From the NCBI GenBank assembly GCA_965113315.1, contig OZ220368.1: 64,000 bases of DNA; one strand, written 5' to 3'. Made by a program: the position numbers and the translations under genes. A model generated the notes under the pieces. It searched no databases, was not told the DNA's origin, and saw only the letters and a program-made list of their open reading frames with translations. The DNA is from Podarcis vaucheri (taxonomy: Eukaryota). Below, in pieces: positions 10,258 to 60,291 of the stretch (position 1 is the first letter of the stretch; every line of letters starts with the position of its first letter).

Positions 10258-10973
10258 CAGTCATACCTCGGGTTGCAAACATGATCTGTGTGGGTATTGG
10301 AAGACACAGGATCTACCCACCTTGGAAGAATGGCAGATGAAGGTGATAGACTATATGGGACTGGCTGAAATGACTGGCAGAATCCGAGACCAGGGGAAAG
10401 AGACAGCGGAAGAAGATTGGAAGAAATTTAAAATTTACCTTAAGAAGAATTGTAAAATTAATGAGTGTTAAAATGTTGTAGTTATAGAAAGTAAGGGATT
10501 ACAGCTGTAAAAGATCAAGTAAAAGAAAAGAAAAGGAAAAATTGGATAAGATTAAGGGGAAGATTTGCTGAAACAAATTTGGGAATTGGAATGCAGAAAG
10601 GGGAGGTATGGGGAAGTCGGCGAAATAAGTTTTAAGAAGAAAAAGGATATGAAACTATATATGTTTGTTTTTGTGTTTGTATGTTTGTATTGTGTATTGT
10701 CTGTGTTTATATAAATTGTGAAAAACCAATAAAAATTTTATTAAAAAAACCATGATCTGTGTGGGAGGCACGTTCGCAACCCACAGCGTTGCGTCTGCGC
10801 ACACACGTGATGAGATCTGGCGCTTCTGTGCATGCGCGTGACATTATTTTGCGTTTCTGTGCATGCGCAAGCGCCGAAACCTGGAAGTAACCCGTTCTGG
10901 TACTTCTGGGTTCAGTGCGGTCCACAACCCGAAAACGTACAACCCGCAGCATTCGTAACCCGAGGTATGACTG
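10258..10973. mobile_element. Tc1/mariner-pogo type MITE interrupted by an L1 insertion
   Basis: TA|cagtcatacctcgggtt ... aacccgaggtatgactg|TA perfect TIRs; split by the insert at 10295-10750. Confidence 0.85.
10295..10750 (+). mobile_element. 5'-truncated L1-type LINE (ORF2 C-terminus, 3' UTR, A-tail) with 15-bp TSD
   Basis: 10295-10471 reads YWKTQDLPTLEEWQMKVIDYMGLAEMTGRIRDQGKETAEEDWKKFKIYLKKNCKINEC*, resembling a non-mammalian L1 ORF2 C-terminus; AATAAA plus A-tail; TSD catgatctgtgtggg at 10280-10294 and 10751-10765. Confidence 0.85.
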
Positions 10974-11379
10974 TATAGCATTCCACATCCATATGGCCTG
11001 TGTTTTAGGTTTTACTGTACAATTAACTATTATCTAAATTCTCATGTTTTGTGCGGTGTGAGGGAAATCCATTCATACCCTAAACCCATAGTGTTCTTTT
11101 TGATGCTTGCTAGCTAGTCAGTTTCACTACAAATTTAATCAGATTTCTTCTTCATTGTGCTGTTGTGTACATTTAGAAACAAAGAATTGAAAATTAACAC
11201 CAACATAACCTTATCCAGAGTTCTGTTTTGCTGTTATTTTGTAAGATATAGTTTGGACTGTCAAATCAAAATACTGTGCACTTCTAGTTTGTGGCTTTTA
11301 GAAGTATAGAACATAACACAGAACAAAAATAGATTATATTTTATACAACTTTTCAGTTGTAGCCCAAAATATACATGTA

Positions 11380-19304: not shown

Positions 19305-19371
19305 ATTGAAAAAATAATGAGCTCCATTGGTGAAGGCATTGACTTTTCTCAGGAACAGCAGAGGATTTCAG
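19305..19371 (+). CDS. ANKS1A: ANKS1A coding exon ([23 protein letters not shown])
   Basis: tttttcag| acceptor and CAG|gtacca donor; 67 nt, phase 0 to phase 1; continues directly from SEWDE. Confidence 0.95.
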
Positions 19372-22300: not shown

Positions 22301-23049
22301 ATTGGAGCACATTACTGGAAGTCATTCAATTTTCCTATAAAATCTGACTATGTGACTGTAGAACAAAAGTTATATGAAGGAAATTTGCTGGAGCTGCAGT
22401 CCAAGCAGATCCTTTCTCTTCTTATTCTGTAACAAGTTCAACATAAGGAATCATCTTCAAATTAGTTTAAGTTTCAAAAGAAACGTATCAGGCTGTTCTT
22501 TGGATTGGATTTCCCACCTCAGCATATTATGCCCCTTTCTGAAGAGGCTCAGTAATTGGTCCTGTTCGCATAAAGAAACCCTCCCTCCCTGCTTGCTTGC
22601 TTGCCTGCCTGCAGCGATCTTTTCAACTTACCTAAATTTACTCGCTTAAATTGGATAAATGTTGCAAATGTGTAGCTGTGCGCTTAAATTTGTCATCTGC
22701 TTTTAAAGGCATTTTGTAATACATATTTTTATTAATGGACATTGTAAGTGGAGGAAGGGTCCGTTGTGTTCATAGTCATAATCCTCTGATACAGGAGCAA
22801 TGAACATTCCAGGAAATACTGCATAGCATTCAGCCTTGCTGAACGTGGTTCTTTTTACATAGTAGAAATAACAATTGCCTAGTGGAAGGAACTGATCCGA
22901 GGCCTTTGGAACTGTGCCACTCCCAGAAGCATAGCCTTTAGGCTACATGTTTATGTGTGGCCCATCAAATGAGACGTGCTTCTTCTACTGAGTACTACCA
23001 TTAGAAATGGGTTGTCCCCTCTCCTGCTTGTGTGGAACATAACACTCTA

Positions 23050-23404
23050 CAGTGGTGCCTCGCAAGACGAAATTAATTCGTTCTGCGAGTTTTGTTGTCT
23101 TGCGATTTTTTTCGTCTTGTGAAGCACGGTGTCGGAAAAGTTTTGGAAAAGCTTCAAAAATCACCAAAGTCTTTAAAAACCTCAAAAAAGGCTACCACAC
23201 CGCGTTCTATGAGTTGCTCCTTGAATCAAGTCGCAACTGTATTAACGGTGTTAAGAAAAAGGAAACAAACTTGCAAGACATTTTCGTCTTGCGAAGCAAG
23301 CCCATAGGGAAAATCGTCTTGCGAAGCAGCTCAAAAAACAAAAAACCCTTTCGTCTAGCGAGTTTTTTTGTCTTGCGAGGCATTCGTCTTGCGAGGTACC
23401 ACTG
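23050..23404. mobile_element. Tc1/mariner-pogo (Tigger-like) MITE
   Basis: TA|cagtggtgcctcgcaagacgaa ... ttcgtcttgcgaggtaccactg|TA; internal repeats of cgtcttgcga; CpG-rich. Confidence 0.88.
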
Positions 23405-26400
23405 TATATTCTGTTGTTCAGTGTCACTCAGACTGCTGGCAGTTAGAGCTTCCCGGTGTCGCTCGTCAAGTTTTTGTTTCGTCATTTCCGATCTCACTTC
23501 AAAGACGTGAATTCCTAGGGTTTGCTTTTCCTTTAATTCTAAAATTAGAAGTGAGCAAAGGGCTATTCACAAGTCCACAGGTATACTCAAAGCATGGAGG
23601 GCGGAGGTGGTCATGCTAAACAGAATTATGGCAAGGGATGCCTATACATGTGCAGCTGAATTCCTGCTGATATAGAAAGTCTGCATGCACACAGCCCCCT
23701 TCCCTATGTTCTGAGCAGCATGTGAGTTGGTGCCAGGATCCACTCAAATAATGGGGGCAGCAGGCACAGTCTTCCTTTTCCTTCCACACATTGGGGTTAT
23801 GTGCGAAAGGGTCTCTTATGGATGTCCCTTGTCTCTGTTCACGTACCAGTGACTGAAGTAACCAACCTTTAAATTTAAAAGGCTTGGGGTCTTCTTGCAG
23901 AGACTTTGGCAGAGGCTCTAGACCTTTCTTTCCTTTGGGATGTGCGGATGCCCTGTTCAATATAAACTGCATTTGCAAAAGCATTTGTTTTTCTGCAACA
24001 ACTTGGCCTCGGGCCTCTATTTGCAATGTAAGGTTTGTATACTTTCCATCTGGTGTTAATCCACTTAATATTCTTACTTGAAAAAAATTACTGTGTTGGA
24101 GCAAAATGGCTTCATGGCATAAAATAACCCTCTCTTTGCTGCAGTTTTCTTGCAGGAGAGGATTCCCTTGGCATGGAGAGGTTGTATATAGTGTGCTGGT
24201 TTTACAGTGATTTCATCCGTCATTTCATTACCCAAAGCCAGAGAAGAATGAGTGGCCACTGCAACGTCAGTTTGCTTACATAAGTCTTGTTGCATTAGAG
24301 AGAATTTGGTAGCTAGTTAAACAGTATAGCTAAAATGTGTATTCTGCTGCACAAAAGCTCATTGCAATTTGCATCCAGTTCATTATTTTAAACACTGTAG
24401 TAAAGCTGACAGTATTATTCAGTGCAGTGAGTTAATACCTATTGTTCTTTTTAAGGATTGGCAATTTGCACCAATGTTCTCCTTTTGGTACAGATTGGTA
24501 CAGACTAATGGTTTCCCAAGCCACTGACTAGGATCCACTAGTGGCCTCAGTGCCACAGCCTGTCCAAGGCCTCCTCACATGCCTGCCCTACTCCCTAGCC
24601 ATGCCACTGCATTTTGGTTGGACCAGTGACAGCACCCATGCTGAGTACAAGTGATTGAGAAGCAGAAGTACAGTGAGGGAGGAGGGAATGAATGTCTCCC
24701 CCCTCTGAGGAGAAAGAGCCAGAGGGAGGTGTTGAAGGAAATGAGAAACTAAGATAAAATGCTGCTGTTAATGAATATTAATAATAAATAAAATGGGAAT
24801 AGAAAGGAAAGGGATAAGAGAGGAGAGCTGTTATAGGAGGGATGAATGAAAGAGGACCAGGAAGAAGCTGGCATGCTGAGGTTAGGGGTGGGGTTAAGGT
24901 CCAGTTGAGTGTGAAAGCAGAATGGGAGAAGAAATTACAGGACATGACTAAAAATAGAGGCATGTGGAGGTGAGATGGGGAAAAATATAAAAGAGTAAGT
25001 CTTCTTCATGTAGAGCCTCTGGATCAGCAAATTCTACCTAAAACGAGGAGGCTGTCACAATACCTCCAGAGCAAATGTCTGTGCTTAGCTTGAGGAAACC
25101 TGAGCTATGAAACTCCTCAGCGCAATGGAAATGCTGTGACAAATAATTTAGCAATTTCCAAAGATGGATTATATATTTGTAGAAAATGATGTCAGTAATT
25201 GCCACCTGATTATGTCAAACCGCCTCTATCTGCCACCATTTTGAGATGGGCTCTGCCCCTGCCCCACCATTTTGTAACTGGTGGACCTCAGTAATTTTCA
25301 GCTATCTGAAGCAGGCCCTGGGGGTGGAAAGTTTGAGAGCCCCTGGTGTAGCTTTTTTCTTGGTGGCTGTAGTTGATATGTTTTCAATTTAGCACTCAAG
25401 TCTGCATTAAATGCATTAAATGCATTCTCTAATGCAGACCATGTATCAAGATACTGTCTGTTTATGTCTAGGCACATGCCCAAAATGAATGAGTGGTTTC
25501 TCCATAGTCTTATAGTGGTGTACAAACATGAAGGTACAGAGTCTTGATTATCAAGGTCATTTTGCTTTGCAGCCGGAGGGTTGCAATCCCATTATAATAA
25601 ACTGCTACCAAATCCAAGGTACTCAGGGTTAAACTAATGTAGTAGCCTTCCTGGTGGCCAAAATGTTTTGGTGCTGCCTGAGTGACCTGTCCCTAGTTAA
25701 ACACAGAGGGTAGGATTCTTTTAGCAGAAGCCCTATGGAAGGGCTTTTTCTTGGGCAACAGGGCTTTCCACACAGCATCTCCAAAATTGGCTTGGGGTGG
25801 GTGGGAGAACCCCCAGAACAGTGCATGAGGAGAGAGGAGAATTTCATTTGGCAAACTAATTCCAACTGGCAAATTCTAGCTTAATTCTCTTTTGCCATGC
25901 TATGCAAATGCAAAACACGTTAGACTTAAGTGGAAAACTATGAAACTACGTTGGCTGTCTTCATCAGTATCACAACATAAACAATTTCTTCAGACTCTCA
26001 AACTTGAAATGGAGTTGTGTTTTGATTTTGATTTTATATTCCAATAGTTAGGTGTTGGAAATTATACTTACTACGAAAACGCTGTTTAGGGCCTTTGCGT
26101 ATATTCTGGCTCTGGTTTTCGAACATCCAAGCTAAAAACTTTCAGGGCCCTTGTACACTGCTGCTCCCAAATAATTATGAGAGAGTTTAGTAACTTGACT
26201 TCTTCATCCCCCCACAATGGCAATTCTGTTCCCCAGTAGCTTCACAAAAGTTGCCTTTGGTGTAATAACTACAGTATCAGATCAGATCTGTGGAGGCAAA
26301 GCATCTTTAATAATCCAAGACGAAGCAAATGCTACATGCAGGCATATAGAAAGCTGGTGTAATATGTTTGTTTCCAATTGGTCTGACTCCCTTCAGTCAT

Positions 26401-28561
26401 GCTTACCTTTCAGTATCTGAAAATCTCAGCTCACGTCTGATAAATTAATCCCCACATACTGTATCCGTTTTATGCTGAAAAACCACACCACATGGCTCAG
26501 GGTAATCAAACAAATTTTTGAAGTTGCAATTTGAATATTGCAAAGCTGCCGTCTTATTTCTCTCTCCCTTGCCAGCTTCTGTTCTGAAACCTGATCACTG
26601 CTTCTGCTGGGAGGGGTGTGAGCATGAGGGGAGGGGAGGGAACAGCCAGTGAGAGAGCGAGAGACGTTGCAAGTGTGGAGCTTGCTGCCTTTAGACAAAG
26701 CAGTCTGCTGCAGCTCTCTGAAAGGGACACATGCTTGCCTGGGAAAATACCAGAGTCCTTTTGCCTGCTTATGGAGTAGAAAGGAATCAGCCCTGGATAA
26801 GGAAAGAATCTCTGGCCAGCAAGAGCCTGCTGCTTGGAATTTGGGGATATAGATGCTGTCCCTTTGCCCAGGCTTTGTCAGAGAAGGGAGGAGGAAATCT
26901 TTTGTGAGTGCTGCATCCCTTGTGCTGCAGTATGCATTAAGAAGGCTGGCCAGCTCCCGAGCACTCATTAACACTGACTTGCTTAACAGAGGATCTTTTC
27001 TGAAGGCCAGCGTAACAGGATCTCTAACCCCTCGATTGTTCAGATAATAGCCAGCACTGCATTGTGTAGGCAGTCTGGAAAGAAAGGGGTGGAGGCTAGT
27101 TTAGGATGTTCAGAACTTCTGATAACCACAGGGTTCAAAGACTGCAACCCCGGTGTCTTCATCAATATTTTGCAAATGCCCTTCAGTGACGGACATGCTA
27201 GGAAGACTGAGAAAATTCTGCGTGACTTGCATAGCAATTCCTCTGAGGACTGCAAAGACGTGGGCTCTGAACTTTCCTTGCTTCATCAAATATCACCAGT
27301 TCTGCACAGGGAAAGTAACAAGTTCCTAGACTCTCCTCTGATGTGTGGAGGGAAGAAGAGGCGTTCCATATAGCTTCTACGGGGCTCTTGGAAGAATTTA
27401 TTTCTGACTAACCGGCTGAAAGGAGGTGCCAGGACATATCTAACCCTATCTGCTGCAGAGAAAAGGGGAGGGGGCGTGTTCATCTTGCTTGGCTTTCCTC
27501 ACCCCCTTAAACCAACGAGCTAAGATGCTTTGTTCTGAAAGCTGTTCGTTATCTCAGTAAGGAATTTGAAGGTAGTGCTTGCCTTTAGTGGAAGAAAATG
27601 AAGGACGGGCAAATACAAGTCAACAAAGAACTGGCAGGAGCAGGCATGTTGGGTGGAAAATGAGCTGACCATTTATCTTTTTGCTCAGACTGGATGCTCC
27701 GGTATACTTATTTGTTCCAGTCTAGATGTTGACGCTGGTTCCCAGCCCAGATCAGTCAATACCGGCTGTCAGGATGTCATGCATCTGGATAGGTGATAAA
27801 ATGACAGTGGCAGGACTTCCAAGCTCAGGCTTGTTGTCCCTCAGGCTTCCACTCCTTATAATAAAATAACAAAGAAAAGCCCCTACCATGGTTTGCCTGT
27901 TCCGGGACTGTTGGGGGGAAAAAAGTATAAATCTTTATTCTTCTACTGCAGTTTGTGTTTTTTGTTTTTGTTTTTATTTGTCTTGCATGTCTTCCTTTGG
28001 ACAGCTGTTCACTAATCTGGCTGCTGCTGCTTTTCTGAACACCCATCGTGTCTGTTTGTCTCTCTCAGCTGCATGAAGATGTATTTTCTCTCTAACTGCT
28101 TTGCACCTCCAGTGCTAACAGTCTTCCTTACTGGCCTGTTGTACAAGGTAATGCATCTGAAGTTGCATGGATGCAAGCATCTGCTGGGCTGTGTTTATTT
28201 GTGAGCTGGCCCTCTCTTGTCTCTCGTGCCTGTAGCCTTGGCTTGGAATGATGCCTTGGAAAGTTTTCAGCCCCCTCAGATGAAACAAGGAGCTGACCCA
28301 GGAGGCTTGTGAGGTTTGGGATGCTTTTGCCTGGCAAGGAGCACACTTGAGCCAGAAAATCAGTGCATGTGATGCCTTGGCCCCAGGAATGGTTCTAAAC
28401 AGCTTGGATTCAGAGTTTGTTTGAGTATAACCAGGAGACCGATTAACACTCTAGTTTGAACAGGACAGAAGCTTATTGTTCATGGTTTGTGTACAGAAGA
28501 GGAACTGTCTGTCAGCTAATTGTTGTACTCTCCTTGGTTTGGCTTCTTTATGGTAATGACT

Positions 28562-28658
28562 ATGATGTGGCAATGCCACCTGTCTTCCTCAGAGTGCCGC
28601 TGCTACCGCCTTAATGGGTTTTCCTTTTTCAAGCGTCTGCCGATTCCTCTCTCGTCAG
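28562..28658 (+). CDS. ANKS1A: Putative alternative N-terminal coding extension of a short ANKS1A isoform ([32 protein letters not shown])
   Basis: Open and in frame with the SAM1 exon, with an upstream in-frame stop at 28517-28519 and ATGs at 28550, 28556, 28562 and 28565. The peptide resembles the ANKS1B/AIDA-1 short-isoform N-terminus ([33 protein letters not shown], recalled). Confidence 0.75.
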
Positions 28659-28765
28659 GTTCACGGATGCTGGAGCAGAGTGTTGGGGAGTGGCTGGAGT
28701 CCATCGGCTTACAGCAGTATGAGAGCAAACTGCTTCTCAATGGCTTTGATGATGTTCGCTTCCTG
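28659..28765 (+). CDS. ANKS1A: ANKS1A coding exon, first half of SAM1 ([35 protein letters not shown])
   Basis: ctcgtcag| acceptor and CTG|gtaagt donor; 107 nt, phase 1 to phase 0; SAM signature W-L-x-S-I-G-L-x-x-Y. Confidence 0.96.
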
Positions 28766-30756
28766 GTAAGTAGCTTTGTTGGAAAAAGTTACAAGGTTTT
28801 ATTGGGACTTGCAGAGCTTACCTTTTGGAAAGCAAATTGAAACTTGTTTTGTACAATACAGATATATATTTGCATTATTTGGTTCTCAGATAAAACAGTT
28901 TATGCAGCACTGTCAGATCAAATTAAACACATCAAAGGCAAGGCTGAATTCTTTTGATTCTCTGGATGAGTACGGACATAGCACACAAAAAATCATTTTG
29001 GGGGGGGTTCTCCTATGTATTCATGAAAATCCCAAACTCATAGAAAGAACATCAAGAAAGCTTTTCTAGATGAATGGTTAAACTCAAGCTGTGTTGACAC
29101 CTGGGTAGTAGATTAGTCTTACTTTGAGAGTTGAGCTACCAGCTTCAGATAGAAATGAACGACAGAAAAATGTTTGAATTCTTTCTGCAGTTGTTAACTC
29201 CTTGAACATTTTCAGCAACCTGCAGGCTAGAGATTATGTTGCTGGAATGATTGCATAGGCATGTATATTTGGGGGCTTGTTTAAATGCTGCTGCTTCAGC
29301 TGGTAAAGATGCATTCTCTACTAAGTATTGCAGAAGCAAACTCCTGTGCTTTCCTCTCTAAACCATTTCACATATGTAGGATGGATCTCAACTATTTTGA
29401 TTTTCTTTAAGAACCCGTTCCCAATACTTCCTCATATCTATGGACAGGACAGTTCAATACAGAATAAGCTTTGGCCATTCTGGTTAAATTACATAATAGG
29501 TGTAGTATCCTTGCCTTGGTATTCATATCACTTAGCTGCTTAAAGCACAACATTGTTTATGCAATCATTGTTGCTGAACATTAGTTGGCCCTGTCAGCAC
29601 TTAGCTAAATTAGGCTCAATCATTCATCAGCACTAGGAAGGAATAGATCCTTACCGAGGGGATCCTTGCTAAGTTTGAATTATTAACATGCCAACTTCCT
29701 TTAAGAAGTCGTTTTATGAAAGAAGCAAAGGTTTAGTATCCTAAAATGATGGGTTATCACCCTTTGGTCCATTTTCACAGAAAATGTAAACCACACATTT
29801 GCAAATCCTTAATCACAGTAGACTTTTTTTTGTCAGTCTCCACCTTCCTAAAGGCAGATGCAAAGGATTTTGAATTGCTTAAAAAAGCTTGAGCATAGCA
29901 ATGTCTCTCTGTTCACTTTGCTGATTTTTCAGGAAAGGTTAGTATCTAATTTCAGAATTACCTGCAAGTCCAGAGTTTGAAAACTGGTCAGATATCCCTT
30001 CTTGAACATGTTAAAACACTAGCCATGCAAAACAAGTAAATTTTCTTTTGAAATGGAGACAACTCAAATCTTTTAGCTATCAAAGTGGACTAGGCTTTCA
30101 CAAAATCTTGTTAGGGTTAACCACTTCAGGTAGTGCTTTTCTTAAATAATCAGAGTAATGTTTATTTGTTCACTTAAAGGTGTAGCCTTCACTAAGAGAT
30201 TTAGGAAGATTAACAAAATATTAACTGTTTACAGTTAATGACTATTCTGTAAGTGGTGGATGACTGGAATTAATAACACCTATACAAACTGTTAGTATCA
30301 TTCATACTGTCAGGGGGAAAGTATGTAGGGGACAACTTATTTATAATTGCTCCTTCTAAGCCTCTTACATGCATTTAAAATTTAAAGTTCCTCTATTTCA
30401 GACTTAAGACCACACCTGTCTTTATTGGGACTCCATTATTGCTGCCACCTTGAATTTTTAGGAAAGTATACTTTATATTTTACAAAGCAGGAAAATGAAA
30501 TAAAAGGAACATGGATACATTTGCCAGGCATTTTTCTTATAAACAGTGACTGTCACAATGCCCATATCCAGTAGTTTCAAAAGAAAGAGAACCAATTTAA
30601 CAAAAGAAAGAGAACCAATTTACTATCTTAGTCCCATCCAGTGCAAATGATTAGATAACTTTCTCCAGCATATTTTAGATACCTCTTCTGAAATAATAAT
30701 GTGGTGATATATTCGTGTCTTAATGAATGTTGGCAGACATAAATACATGTTAAATA

Positions 30757-49445: not shown

Positions 49446-49544
49446 GGCAGTAATGTCATGGAAGATCAGGACCTTCGAGAGATTGGTATTAGTGACCCAC
49501 AGCACCGCAGAAAACTTCTTCAGGCAGCACGGTCTCTTCCTAAG
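49446..49544 (+). CDS. ANKS1A: ANKS1A coding exon, second half of SAM1 ([33 protein letters not shown])
   Basis: cttcctacag| acceptor and AAG|gttaga donor; 99 nt, phase 0-0. Confidence 0.96.
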
Positions 49545-52128: not shown

Positions 52129-52278
52129 GTGAAATCTCTGGGCTGTGATGGGACTCAGCCTTCTGTTCCTGTATGGCTTGACTCCCTGGGGCTGCAGGAT
52201 TATATTCAATCATTTTTGTCGAGTGGCTATAGCTCTATAGACTCTGTGAAAAACCTCTGGGAACTAGAACTAGTAAAT
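52129..52278 (+). CDS. ANKS1A: ANKS1A coding exon, SAM2 ([50 protein letters not shown])
   Basis: ttctgcag| acceptor and AAT|gtaagt donor; 150 nt, open frame. Confidence 0.96.
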
Positions 52279-52427: not shown

Positions 52428-52535
52428 GTACTTAAGGTAAATCTTATTGGTCATCGTAAGCGTATAATAGCCTCTCTGGCAGACAGACCATATGAGGAGC
52501 CCCCACAGAAACCACCACGGTTCTCTCAGCTAAGA
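52428..52535 (+). CDS. ANKS1A: ANKS1A coding exon, end of SAM2 ([36 protein letters not shown])
   Basis: ccctgcag| acceptor and AGA|gtgagt donor; 108 nt; SAM helix-5 motif GHRKRI. Confidence 0.96.
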
Positions 52536-53100: not shown

Positions 53101-53265
53101 TGCCAGGATTTGATATCCCAGACGTCTTCACCCCTAAGCCAGAGTGACTCTTGTACAGGGAGATCTGCAGATCTCCTGCTGCCTTTGGGGGATGCTGGAA
53201 AGAAGAGGCATGAGAGCAGCCATGACATTGCATCATACCCCAGAACAGAGAGACTCAAGGCACAG
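53101..53265 (+). CDS. ANKS1A: ANKS1A coding exon, SAM-PTB linker ([28 protein letters not shown]...RLKAQ)
   Basis: gatttcag| acceptor and CAG|gtattc donor; 165 nt, open frame; matches ANKS1[29 protein letters not shown] as recalled. Confidence 0.94.
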
Positions 53266-54578: not shown

Positions 54579-54704
54579 GAGGAACGCCGTGAATCTAAAC
54601 TTACGCTCAGACCCCCTAGTCTGGCTGCTGCTTATGCCCCTGTCCAACACTGGCAGCATCAACCAGAGAAGCTTATATTTGAATCCTGTGGGTATGAAGC
54701 CAAT
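54579..54704 (+). CDS. ANKS1A: ANKS1A coding exon ([42 protein letters not shown]), start of PTB
   Basis: gttttcag| acceptor and AAT|gtaagt donor; 126 nt. Confidence 0.96.
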
Positions 54705-55416: not shown

Positions 55417-55488
55417 TATCTAGGTTCCATGTTAATCAAAGATCTTCGAGGGACAGAATCTACACAGGATGCCTGTGCAAAGATGAGG
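55417..55488 (+). CDS. ANKS1A: ANKS1A coding exon, PTB ([24 protein letters not shown])
   Basis: caaacag| acceptor and AGG|gtaggt donor; 72 nt; PTB YLGS motif. Confidence 0.96.
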
Positions 55489-55888: not shown

Positions 55889-55975
55889 AAATCAACAGAG
55901 CATATGAAGAAGACCCCAACTATAATATTATCTATCACTTACAAAGGAGTGAAATTCATTGATGCATCTAACAAG
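55889..55975 (+). CDS. ANKS1A: ANKS1A coding exon, PTB ([29 protein letters not shown])
   Basis: tttacaaag| acceptor and AAG|gtgagg donor; 87 nt. Confidence 0.95.
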
Positions 55976-56455: not shown

Positions 56456-56593
56456 AATGTTATTGCTGAGCACGAAATCCGGAACATCTCTTGTGCTGCA
56501 CAGGACCCGGAGGATCTCTGTACATTTGCCTATATCACAAAGGACTTGCAAACTAGCCACCACTACTGCCATGTCTTCAGTACCGTTGATGTA
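56456..56593 (+). CDS. ANKS1A: ANKS1A coding exon, PTB ([46 protein letters not shown])
   Basis: tttggcag| acceptor and GTA|gtaagt donor; 138 nt; PTB CHVF motif. Confidence 0.96.
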
Positions 56594-58142: not shown

Positions 58143-58313
58143 AATCTAACATATGAAATCATTCTGACATTGGGACAAGCATTTGAAGTAGCCTACCAGC
58201 TGGCCCTCCAAGCCCAAAAATCAAAACCTCCAGGTGCTTTGACAGCTGAAATGATAGAAACAAAATCTTCAAAACCGGTGCCTAAACCTCGAGCCAGCAT
58301 GAGGAAATCAGCA
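58143..58313 (+). CDS. ANKS1A: ANKS1A coding exon, end of PTB ([26 protein letters not shown]...[14 protein letters not shown])
   Basis: ttttcttaag| acceptor and GCA|gtacgt donor; 171 nt. Confidence 0.96.
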
Positions 58314-59364: not shown

Positions 59365-59463
59365 GTGCCGCTCCCTCCCGATAGTCGCTGTTGTTACTGT
59401 CACACCTGTACTACACACCGTCCCTCCTATCTGCCGCTGCAATCTGTTAGTCAAGGAGCTAAG
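59365..59463 (+). CDS. ANKS1A: Probable alternative cassette exon of ANKS1A (VPLPPDSRCCYCHTCTTHRPSYLPLQSVSQGAK)
   Basis: Long pyrimidine tract ending cctcag| and an AAG|gtcttt donor; 99 nt, phase 0-0, no stop; retains several CpGs, unlike the flanking intron. Confidence 0.7.
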
Positions 59464-60171: not shown

Positions 60172-60291
60172 CTCGAGCCATCTGAAGTGGACCAAGACTC
60201 CCAGTCCCATGCTAGTGTGTCCTGGGTTGTAGAGCCCAAGCAGGATTCCAAGAGGACCCTCAGCACTAAGTATGAGACTACTATCTTCTGA
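60172..60291 (+). CDS. ANKS1A: ANKS1A terminal coding exon ([39 protein letters not shown])
   Basis: ttttctag| acceptor; TGA at 60289-60291; ANKS1-family C-terminus TKYETTIF. Confidence 0.96.

What the first reader, a model, noticed from the sequence alone, without database searches (positions are those of the whole stretch)
28517..28765. AIDA-1-like N-terminus hidden in an ANKS1A intron: candidate short, ankyrin-less SAM-SAM-PTB isoform
Seen: the last ~100 nt of the intron before the SAM1 exon are open and in frame, reading (MVMT)[44 protein letters not shown]. The splice acceptor's pyrimidine tract therefore doubles as codons ([13 protein letters not shown]). Established (from memory): short AIDA-1 isoforms of the paralogue ANKS1B begin [33 protein letters not shown] at the same position, lack ankyrin repeats, bind PSD-95 through the C-terminus and carry an NLS in SAM2. 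Here MMWQCHLS is identical and the pattern R-x-Y-x3-G-[FY]-S-x2-KR-x-P-x4/5-G is kept, as are GHRKRI and TKYETTIF. Inference: ANKS1A retains an internally initiated isoform that predates the ANKS1A/ANKS1B duplication, 479 aa from ATG 28562 (512 aa with the Cys-rich exon), possibly a neuronal AIDA-1 counterpart. The MMWQC start and Cys cluster could be an S-palmitoylation signal.
Basis: partly seen in the sequence, partly recalled or inferred. Interest (0 to 1): 0.85.

Follow-up and report, generated by a model that had tools for sequence, protein, structure and literature searches.

The report
Ancient short ANKS1A isoform start
The open stretch in front of the SAM1 exon is a real alternative first coding exon of ANKS1A, conserved across jawed vertebrates, that gives an ankyrin-less SAM-SAM-PTB protein like AIDA-1; it is already modelled in RefSeq and Ensembl for many species but seems never to have been studied.

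Summary
Window 28520-28765 (+) is one open frame. It has four in-frame ATGs (28550, 28556, 28562, 28565) and reads [37 protein letters not shown] straight through the canonical acceptor (exon start 28659) into SAM1.

One sequence alone cannot exclude chance; comparison with other species settles it. The 33-residue leader is identical in bird and most mammalian ANKS1A models and 23-24/27 identical in four of five teleost models compared (20/27 in eel). Similarity stops abruptly at the donor and is out of frame upstream.

The leader is homologous to the ANKS1B (AIDA-1) short N-terminus (z = 10-12, 0 of 20000 shuffles). In fish ANKS1B it is also contiguous with the SAM1 exon, so it predates the A/B duplication.

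It is not hidden. RefSeq, Ensembl and GenBank already hold such models (Anolis carolinensis X12, Pituophis X4 at 479 aa, turtle, birds, about ten mammals, dozens of teleosts). I found no paper on it.

Neuronal expression and palmitoylation are also untested. AlphaFold2 predicts a disordered leader. An alternative acceptor at 28592|28593 may also insert 22 of these residues into long isoforms.

The parts
19305..19371 (+). Upstream constitutive exon of the long isoforms ([22 protein letters not shown], ends in phase 1). It splices to 28659, or alternatively to 28593.
   Evidence: tblastn of P0114; borders AG|ATT and G|GTACC read.
28367..28549 (+). Leader (5'UTR) of the alternative first exon. 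It is alignable without an intron to the 5' extension of Anolis carolinensis ANKS1A X12, but is interrupted by stops and a frameshift in the window, so it is non-coding here. The transcription start lies at or upstream of about 28367 (inferred).
   Evidence: tblastn of P0260 gives one HSP over 28367-28765 with '*' in the window translation. TAA at 28517-28519. No CpG island here, CpG o/e 0.08-0.13.
28550..28567 (+). Cluster of four in-frame start codons, ATG GTA ATG ACT ATG ATG (M-V-M-T-M-M). The MM of MMWQC is the start shared with teleosts and ANKS1B.
   Evidence: MVMTMM is conserved in squamate, bird and mammal sequences; teleosts have only MM.
28562..28658 (+). Coding 5' extension of the SAM1 exon: the 33-residue N-terminal peptide [33 protein letters not shown]. 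The last codon is completed by 28659-28660. In the long isoforms this stretch is intronic and holds the pyrimidine tract and acceptor.
28575..28592 (+). Candidate alternative 3' splice site (ccacctgtcttcctcag|AG; the exon would start at 28593). With the upstream exon in phase 1 it gives ...[28 protein letters not shown], a 22-residue (66-nt) insert in long isoforms.
   Evidence: Sequence read. The same junction appears in the models Heliangelus exortis X12 (P0267), Chloebia (P0295) and Ophiophagus (P0303). Teleost Ensembl models P0250 and P0261 join just before CRCY. Usage in this species was not tested.
28659..28765 (+). Canonical first SAM1 exon ([36 protein letters not shown]); donor GTAAGT at 28766.
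   Evidence: Pfam SAM_1 E=4.4e-8 on 28664-28765.
49446..49544 (+). Second SAM1 exon.
   Evidence: tblastn; Pfam SAM_2/SAM_1; borders.
52129..52278 (+). First SAM2 exon.
   Evidence: Pfam SAM_1 E=1.3e-8.
52428..52535 (+). Second SAM2 exon, carrying GHRKRI (the motif known as an NLS in AIDA-1).
53101..53265 (+). Linker exon.
54579..54704 (+). Linker / start of PTB exon.
55417..55488 (+). PTB exon.
55889..55975 (+). PTB exon.
56456..56593 (+). PTB exon.
   Evidence: Pfam PID E=8.9e-8.
58143..58313 (+). Last PTB exon.
59365..59463 (+). Optional 33-codon Cys-rich exon (VPLPPDSRCCYCHTCTTHRPSYLPLQSVSQGAK).
   Evidence: tblastn of P0175; borders. Also present in P0061 and P0177, and in the teleost P0086.
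60172..60291 (+). Last coding exon, ending [11 protein letters not shown] (C-terminal PDZ-ligand-like tail).

Best explanation
Window 28367-28765 is an alternative first exon of ANKS1A, driven by an internal promoter that is not a CpG island and lies in the intron before the SAM1 exon. The transcript runs unspliced across the canonical acceptor (28658|28659).

Translation starts in the ATG cluster 28550-28565. It puts a conserved 33-residue (37 with MVMT) leader, predicted to be disordered, directly in front of SAM1.

Splicing to the eleven downstream exons gives a protein of 479-483 aa, or 512-516 aa with the optional Cys-rich exon. This protein has no ankyrin repeats. It keeps SAM1-SAM2 (with GHRKRI), the PTB domain and the ...YETTIF tail.

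It is the ANKS1A counterpart of the short AIDA-1 (ANKS1B) isoforms and was inherited from the single pre-duplication gene.

Shown here:
- the sequence anatomy;
- conservation of the peptide across jawed vertebrates, with loss of conservation beyond the donor and loss of frame upstream;
- homology with the ANKS1B short N-terminus;
- existing gene models with this start.

Inferred:
- use of the promoter and start codons in this species;
- that the leader acts as a short linear motif (partner binding or Cys5 lipidation) rather than a fold.
For: 1. ORF and splice signals.

2. Genomic ORF fragments. Forty-one from other species cover the whole exon and start M(M)WQCH[LIVF][11 protein letters not shown]. 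They diverge completely right after VRFL/M|VS, i.e. at the donor. Further ones appear.

3. Annotated spliced models with this N-terminus and no ankyrin Pfam families:
- squamates: Anolis carolinensis X12, Pituophis catenifer X4 (479 aa), Naja;
- turtle: Emys orbicularis X2 and X3;
- birds: Athene, Pelecanus, Sylvia, Geospiza, Apaloderma, Anser;
- mammals: Macrotis, Sorex, Ochotona, Puma, Lemmus, Elephantulus, Chrysochloris, Trichechus, Capricornis;
- about 60 teleost entries.

4. Degree of conservation. The leader is 33/33 identical between birds and most mammals. It is 23-24/27 identical between mammal and four of five teleosts (20/27 in Anguilla), against 25-28/35 for the adjoining SAM1 part.

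5. Homology with ANKS1B. The A and B leaders share 15-21 of 33 residues, z = 10-12, 0 of 20000 shuffles. This remains significant without MMWQCHLS (z 6.4-8.6). W3, C5, S8, Y15, S21 and K24 are invariant in 58 short isoforms of both paralogues. Teleost ANKS1B genomic ORFs show the same contiguity with the SAM1 exon.

6. Upstream of the ATG cluster the frame is not kept. There are stops and a frameshift against Anolis X12 and against the close relative P0001. This places the start of the CDS at the ATG cluster.

7. All downstream exons are intact in the window. The codon sum is 479/512. SAM and PID hits were obtained exon by exon.

8. Short ANK-less AIDA-1 isoforms are real proteins enriched in the postsynaptic density (PMC6684583, PMC4565644).
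Against: Gnomon and Ensembl models may be partly driven by protein homology.

No orthologous DNA could be fetched (look-up of encoding contigs closed). Coding selection (dN/dS, PhyloCSF) was therefore not measured, and part of the conservation could come from overlapping splice signals: two pyrimidine tracts and acceptors lie inside the peptide's codons.

AlphaFold2 gives no structure for the leader (pLDDT about 25), so its function stays open.

No paper describing this ANKS1A isoform was found.
Confidence: 0.85

Rival explanations
1. The stretch is conserved mainly as an alternatively spliced internal coding segment plus splice signals. An upstream acceptor at 28592|28593 adds 22 residues ([22 protein letters not shown]) to ankyrin-containing long isoforms. 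On this reading the MMWQC start is used little or not at all, and the short models are annotation by-products.
For: Long models join the preceding exon in frame to ...[10 protein letters not shown]: Heliangelus X12, Chloebia and Ophiophagus. Teleost Ensembl models (Salmo trutta, Amphiprion) join just before CRCY. An ANKS1B model joins at ...AK-DYRYYPVDGY. The window has a good acceptor there, cctcag|AG, in the right phase.
Against: MMWQCH lies upstream of that acceptor, yet its ATG, W3 and C5 are invariant in both paralogues from elasmobranchs to mammals. Models that start at MMWQC outnumber the insert models by far. The homologous ANKS1B short proteins are seen on Western blots, and an antibody against their N-terminal region detects them (PMC4565644). 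The two uses do not exclude each other.
Confidence: 0.1
2. The open frame is a chance ORF in an intron and the resemblance to AIDA-1 is coincidental.
For: In one sequence alone, about 46 open codons before an exon are not rare, roughly one case in ten.
Against: The peptide is near-identical across about 430 million years, while the sequence beyond the donor diverges at once. The shuffle test gave 0 of 20000. phmmer alignments cover query residues 1-68 in both ANKS1A and ANKS1B proteins, with E-values from 1e-16 to 1e-41.
Confidence: 0.01
3. The exon is ancestral and coding in other vertebrates, but it is silent or decaying in this particular species.
For: No expression data for this species. 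The leader upstream has stops where the Anolis model reads through.
Against: The peptide, all four ATGs, both acceptors, the donor and every downstream exon are intact. The peptide equals the Anolis X12 peptide in all 33 residues. The upstream stops lie in what is 5'UTR in most species.
Confidence: 0.04

Closest known systems
Short AIDA-1 isoforms of ANKS1B (AIDA-1D/-1C in the naming of PMC6684583; rat AIDA-1d/-1e, UniProt P0C6S7-3/-2, in that of PMC4565644)
   Same: - An internal start directly in front of SAM1, with a 33-residue leader that ends in a Gly codon spanning the canonical acceptor.
- The leader shares MMWQCH.S, Y15, G19, S21-L-(L/F)-K-R-x-P and G33.
- No ankyrin repeats.
- SAM-SAM-PTB architecture, the GHRKRI motif and the KYETTIF end.
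   Different: - It is the paralogous gene, ANKS1A/Odin.
- Its leader keeps the Cys trio C5/C12/C14 (ECRCY), whereas mammalian ANKS1B has QDYRYY.
- Expression pattern, PSD-95 binding and nuclear signalling are established only for ANKS1B.
- No publication on this ANKS1A form was found.
Predicted ANKS1A short isoforms in RefSeq, Ensembl and GenBank (e.g. XP_062835756.1 Anolis carolinensis X12, XP_070797607.1 Pituophis catenifer X4, XP_074781765.1 Athene noctua X7, XP_065260579.1 Emys orbicularis X2, Puma concolor X2, teleost anks1ab models)
   Same: Orthologous exon, identical or near-identical leader, and the same downstream exons. Pituophis X4 has the same length (479 aa) as the window's codon sum.
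   Different: These are computational models. Some extend the ORF upstream (MLCAH... in birds, 66 residues in Anolis) into sequence that is closed by stops in the window.
Ape-specific short ANKS1A driven by an LTR2B (PMC12082684)
   Same: An ankyrin-less ANKS1A protein that keeps SAM-SAM-PTB and is made from an intragenic promoter; it was detected by RNA-seq and Western blot.
   Different: Its promoter is a young retroelement in intron 7 that splices into the next exon, and it is restricted to apes. The exon described here is ancestral to jawed vertebrates and brings its own conserved coding leader.

Membership tests
ANKS1 short (AIDA-1D/C-type) isoform | N-terminal leader MMWQCH... homologous to the ANKS1B short N-terminus | tested here: met
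   phmmer aligns query residues 1-68 to residues 1-68 of ANKS1B short proteins (P0091, P0108, P0089), E 1e-17 to 1e-22. The leader alone gives z = 10-12, 0 of 20000 shuffles.
ANKS1 short (AIDA-1D/C-type) isoform | Leader encoded as a 5' extension contiguous with the first SAM1 exon, ending at the canonical acceptor | tested here: met
   Window sequence. Genomic ORF fragments show the same contiguity in ANKS1A and in teleost ANKS1B (P0092, P0099, P0104).
ANKS1 short (AIDA-1D/C-type) isoform | No ankyrin repeats in the product | tested here: met
   A stop at 28517-28519 closes the frame upstream and the ATG cluster lies downstream of all ANK exons. Orthologous short models carry only PF00536, PF07647 and PF00640.
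ANKS1 short (AIDA-1D/C-type) isoform | SAM1-SAM2-PTB retained and intact | tested here: met
   Pfam run exon by exon finds SAM_1/SAM_2 on four exons and PID on 56456-56593. All exons are stop-free and 82-100% identical to Anolis X12.
ANKS1 short (AIDA-1D/C-type) isoform | GHRKRI motif in SAM2 and a C-terminal ...YETTIF PDZ-ligand-like tail | tested here: met
   Both are present in the window. NLS activity and PSD-95 binding themselves cannot be tested with these tools.
ANKS1 short (AIDA-1D/C-type) isoform | Transcript initiated inside the gene and reading through the acceptor in this species | not testable with these tools
ANKS1 short (AIDA-1D/C-type) isoform | Brain or postsynaptic enrichment | not tested
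   Known for ANKS1B only (PMC6684583, PMC4565644). No data for ANKS1A were obtained.
ANKS1A (Odin) orthologue rather than ANKS1B | ANKS1A-type residues and best matches to proteins named ANKS1A | tested here: met
   The window has [10 protein letters not shown] and [18 protein letters not shown], against DYRYYPVDGY and PQYENHL.ANGFDN in ANKS1B. The best full matches are ANKS1A models.
S-acylated (palmitoylated) N-terminal anchor | Lipid attached to Cys5, Cys12 or Cys14 | not testable with these tools
   C5 is invariant, C12 is kept in at least 90% of sequences, and C14 is lost in mammalian and elasmobranch ANKS1B. No literature support was found.

The most novel reading that the evidence does not exclude
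The 33-residue leader is a functional module shared by ANKS1A-short and AIDA-1D/C. It would be a disordered targeting or partner-binding motif, possibly acylated on the invariant Cys5. It would be used in two ways: as the N-terminus of an ankyrin-less isoform made from an ancient internal promoter, and, through the acceptor at 28592|28593, as a regulated 22-residue insert in the long isoform.

On this reading ANKS1A, so far studied only as full-length Odin, would have an unstudied AIDA-1-like isoform in all jawed vertebrates, mammals included.
Probability: 0.35. Interest if true: 0.5.

Novelty: already known. Interest (0 to 1): 0.3.

Why it matters
ANKS1A (Odin) is studied as a full-length adaptor of EGFR and Eph receptors. 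Its paralogue's short, ankyrin-less forms are the abundant postsynaptic AIDA-1 proteins linked to a neurodevelopmental syndrome.

If ANKS1A carries the same ancient short form, with a leader more conserved than the neighbouring SAM residues, three things follow:
- Knock-outs, gene traps and antibodies aimed at the N-terminal half of ANKS1A may leave an active SAM-SAM-PTB protein untouched.
- The leader is a candidate functional motif common to both genes.
- The recent ape LTR-driven short ANKS1A appears as a second route to an old design.

For genome annotation the case is ordinary: the exon is already modelled in related species.

Tried and rejected
**Orthologous DNA.** No orthologous DNA was obtained, so there is no dN/dS or PhyloCSF result.

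**RNA reads.** Later searches used database proteins of other species (teleost P0086, bat P0091) or window exons from 28664 onwards.

**Joined model.** The spliced model was never joined, searched or folded. Exons were searched one by one, and lengths come from codon arithmetic. The fold used the snake RefSeq protein P0263 with an alignment of database proteins.

**Human entries.** Two human entries (P0042, P0115) appeared in result tables. They were not fetched, compared or searched.

**Structure of the leader.** AlphaFold2 gives pLDDT of about 25 for residues 1-37, so there is no evidence that it docks on SAM or PTB. No solved chain covers residues 1-17 of the short N-terminus.

**Palmitoylation.** No paper links ANKS1B to it in a relevant way.

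**Literature on the isoform.** Nothing was found for the peptide string or for an ancestral short ANKS1A. Only the ape LTR2B isoform turned up.

**CpG-island promoter at the exon.** Rejected; CpG o/e is 0.08-0.13.

**Logan members of the short-isoform clusters.** These are C-terminal fragments and say nothing about the 5' end.

**Invertebrate homologues.** Their alignments start only at or near SAM1, so there is no evidence for the leader outside vertebrates.

**Earlier guess corrected.** My early guess that P0002-P0024 were birds was wrong for many of them; SRTLEQ is the mammalian type.
Full report
**Observation.** Searches show one open frame on the + strand from 28520 to 28840. A TAA at 28517-28519 closes it upstream.

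- It holds four in-frame ATGs (28550, 28556, 28562, 28565).
- It reads [72 protein letters not shown].
- A consensus donor, GTAAGT, follows at 28766.
- The canonical acceptor AG is at 28657-28658, so the canonical exon starts at 28659 in phase 1.
- GHRKRI and TKYETTIF-stop are present.

About 46 open codons upstream of an exon would occur by chance roughly once in ten, so the window alone proves nothing. The comparison with other species decides.

**Exon map and lengths.** I ran tblastn of bird, snake and anole ANKS1A proteins against the window and read the borders directly. This gives:

- the upstream constitutive exon 19305-19371;
- the SAM1 exon 28659-28765;
- ten further constitutive coding exons from 49446-49544 to 60172-60288, with the stop at 60289-60291;
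- an optional 33-codon exon at 59365-59463.

All exons are free of stops. Adding codons from ATG 28562 gives 68+33+50+36+55+42+24+29+46+57+39 = 479, or 512 with the optional exon.

Pfam was run exon by exon. It finds SAM_1/SAM_2 on four exons and PID on 56456-56593.

**Conservation.**

- *Word-index search.* The exon translation returned 41 short ORF fragments that cover the whole exon. Printed in register, all of them start M(M)WQCH[LIVF][11 protein letters not shown]. They stay alignable to the end of the exon and then diverge completely after VRFL/M|VS. That is the signature of an exon border at the donor with no border at the canonical acceptor.
- *Exhaustive phmmer search.* This gave 130 hits. 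About sixty align from query residue 1 or 2.
- *Names.* The spliced proteins among the hits are annotated ANKS1A isoforms:
  - squamates: Anolis carolinensis X12, Pituophis catenifer X4, Naja naja;
  - turtle: Emys orbicularis X2 and X3;
  - birds: Athene, Pelecanus, Sylvia, Geospiza, Apaloderma, Anser;
  - mammals: Macrotis, Sorex, Ochotona, Puma, Lemmus, Elephantulus, Chrysochloris, Trichechus, Capricornis;
  - about sixty teleost models (anks1ab).
- *Domain content.* Their precomputed Pfam content is SAM_1, SAM_2 and PID, without ankyrin families.
- *Degree of identity.* The 33-residue leader is identical in birds and most mammals. It is 23-24/27 identical between a mammal and four of five teleosts (20/27 in Anguilla). 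That is at least as conserved as the adjoining SAM1 residues (25-28/35).
- *Taxon of the window.* The window carries the squamate variant FSFFKR. Its leader equals that of Anolis X12.

**Where the coding region starts.** The 66-residue 5' extension of Anolis X12 aligns to window 28367-28561 as one uninterrupted HSP, but the window translation has stops and a frameshift there.

A close relative's ORF (P0001) is in a different frame from the window upstream of MVMT. Bird models read MLCAH... through sequence that the window closes with TAA.

So the roughly 200 nt upstream are conserved as nucleotides but not as a frame. They are 5'UTR, and the first exon is at least about 400 nt long.

MVMTMM is conserved in amniotes, while teleosts and ANKS1B have only MM. 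Initiation at any of the four ATGs changes the product by at most four residues.

There is no CpG island here (CpG o/e 0.08-0.13). This fits a tissue-restricted promoter but proves nothing.

**Homology with AIDA-1.** P0108 starts [33 protein letters not shown], and Pipistrellus ANKS1B (P0091) differs by one residue.

Elasmobranch ANKS1B isoforms (P0089, P0178 and others) read MWQCHLSTSECPYYRIDGMSLLKRLPIQPLTG. Teleost ANKS1B reads MMWQCQLSQPDCRCYRVDGYSLLKRLPLHPLIG. Both are intermediate between mammalian ANKS1B and ANKS1A.

An ungapped comparison of the 33-residue leaders of ANKS1A and ANKS1B gives 15-21 identities, z = 10-12, with 0 of 20000 shuffles reaching the observed score. Without the first eight residues z is still 6.4-8.6.

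In an alignment of 58 short isoforms of both genes, W3, C5, S8, Y15, S21 and K24 are invariant.

Teleost ANKS1B genomic ORFs run from the leader through SAM1 into the intron (…FMVS…), which is the same architecture. In both genes the leader ends with a Gly codon that spans the acceptor.

The extension therefore existed before the ANKS1A/ANKS1B duplication. Invertebrate homologues align only from SAM1.

**What is known.** Short ankyrin-less AIDA-1 isoforms are major proteins of the postsynaptic density and bind PSD-95 through the C-terminus (PMC6684583, PMC4565644).

For ANKS1A I found no description of this isoform. The only short ANKS1A in the searched literature is an ape-specific one driven by an LTR2B in intron 7 (PMC12082684), which is an independent route to the same domain set.

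No solved chain covers residues 1-17 of the short N-terminus. Because orthologous models are in RefSeq and Ensembl, including for the related lizard, I rate the feature as already known at the level of annotation, although it is functionally uncharacterised.

**Mechanism.** The best-supported reading has four parts:

1. An internal promoter produces the transcript.
2. Its first exon reads through the acceptor.
3. Translation starts at the ATG cluster.
4. The product is a 479-516 aa SAM-SAM-PTB adaptor without the ankyrin repeats.

AlphaFold2 on the snake orthologue with the 58-sequence alignment folds SAM1, SAM2 and PTB with confidence. It leaves residues 1-37 at a pLDDT of about 25.

A leader that is disordered yet almost invariant points to a short linear motif: partner binding, or modification of the invariant Cys5.

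Inside the leader there is a second good acceptor, ccacctgtcttcctcag|AG, which would start an exon at 28593. It is in phase with the upstream exon (G+AG = Glu).

Long-isoform models from a hummingbird, a finch and the king cobra use exactly this junction (...[14 protein letters not shown]...). Two teleost Ensembl models join just before CRCY. One ANKS1B model joins at the equivalent place.

So 22 of the 33 residues may also serve as an optional insert in the long protein. Two pyrimidine tracts then overlap the codons, and this dual use may add to the conservation.

It cannot explain the invariance of the ATG, W3 and C5, which lie upstream of that acceptor. I therefore keep this as a minor rival or complement (0.1).

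**Limits.**

- The gene models cited are computational.
- Human entries seen in result tables (P0042, P0115) were left untouched.
- The search of earlier findings returned nothing bearing on this locus.

**Verdict.** It is not novel as an annotation and is of modest interest as unstudied biology. Interest 0.3.

Noticed in passing
window 28575-28593: There is a second acceptor inside the leader (cctcag|AG; an exon would start at 28593), in phase with exon 19305-19371. It would insert 22 residues ([22 protein letters not shown]) into long ANKS1A isoforms. The same junction is present in models from Heliangelus, Chloebia and Ophiophagus, and near it in Salmo trutta and Amphiprion models. An ANKS1B model (P0120) joins at the equivalent spot.
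   Followed up: partly
window 59365-59463: An optional 33-codon exon between the PTB domain and the C-terminus carries a CCYCHTC cluster (VPLPPDSRCCYCHTCTTHRPSYLPLQSVSQGAK). It is conserved in bird models (P0175, P0177, P0061) and in a teleost model (P0086). No Pfam family reaches its cut-off.
   Followed up: partly
window 10400-11200 and 22900-23500: Two patches have CpG observed/expected of about 1.0-1.2, in a window whose mean is 0.21. They are not tandem repeats and not copies of each other. They could be internal CpG-island promoters or enhancers of ANKS1A. They remain unexplained.
   Followed up: partly
teleost proteins P0075, P0077, P0083, P0084, P0086, P0193 (no window coordinates): In teleost ANKS1A the roughly 20 codons directly upstream of MMWQC are open and conserved (…SPLPxWCxCxRLCWP[RK]-MMWQC) without an ATG of their own. 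Some RefSeq models extend the ORF far upstream through them. They may be a conserved 5' leader or a longer teleost-specific N-terminus.
   Followed up: no
P0117 and P0189 (Pygocentrus nattereri ANKS1A X9/X10); equivalent to window exon 19305-19371: There is a further class of ankyrin-less ANKS1A models. These start just before the EKIM(S/T)..G.GIDF exon and use the canonical acceptor, so they lack the MMWQC leader.
   Followed up: no
P0065 and P0114 (same unnamed species; equivalent to window 28562-28800): Two Logan ORFs share the same retained downstream intron. One starts at MMWQC. The other has the upstream exon spliced to the canonical acceptor, so it comes from RNA. This hints at slow removal of the roughly 20-kb intron after the SAM1 exon.
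   Followed up: no
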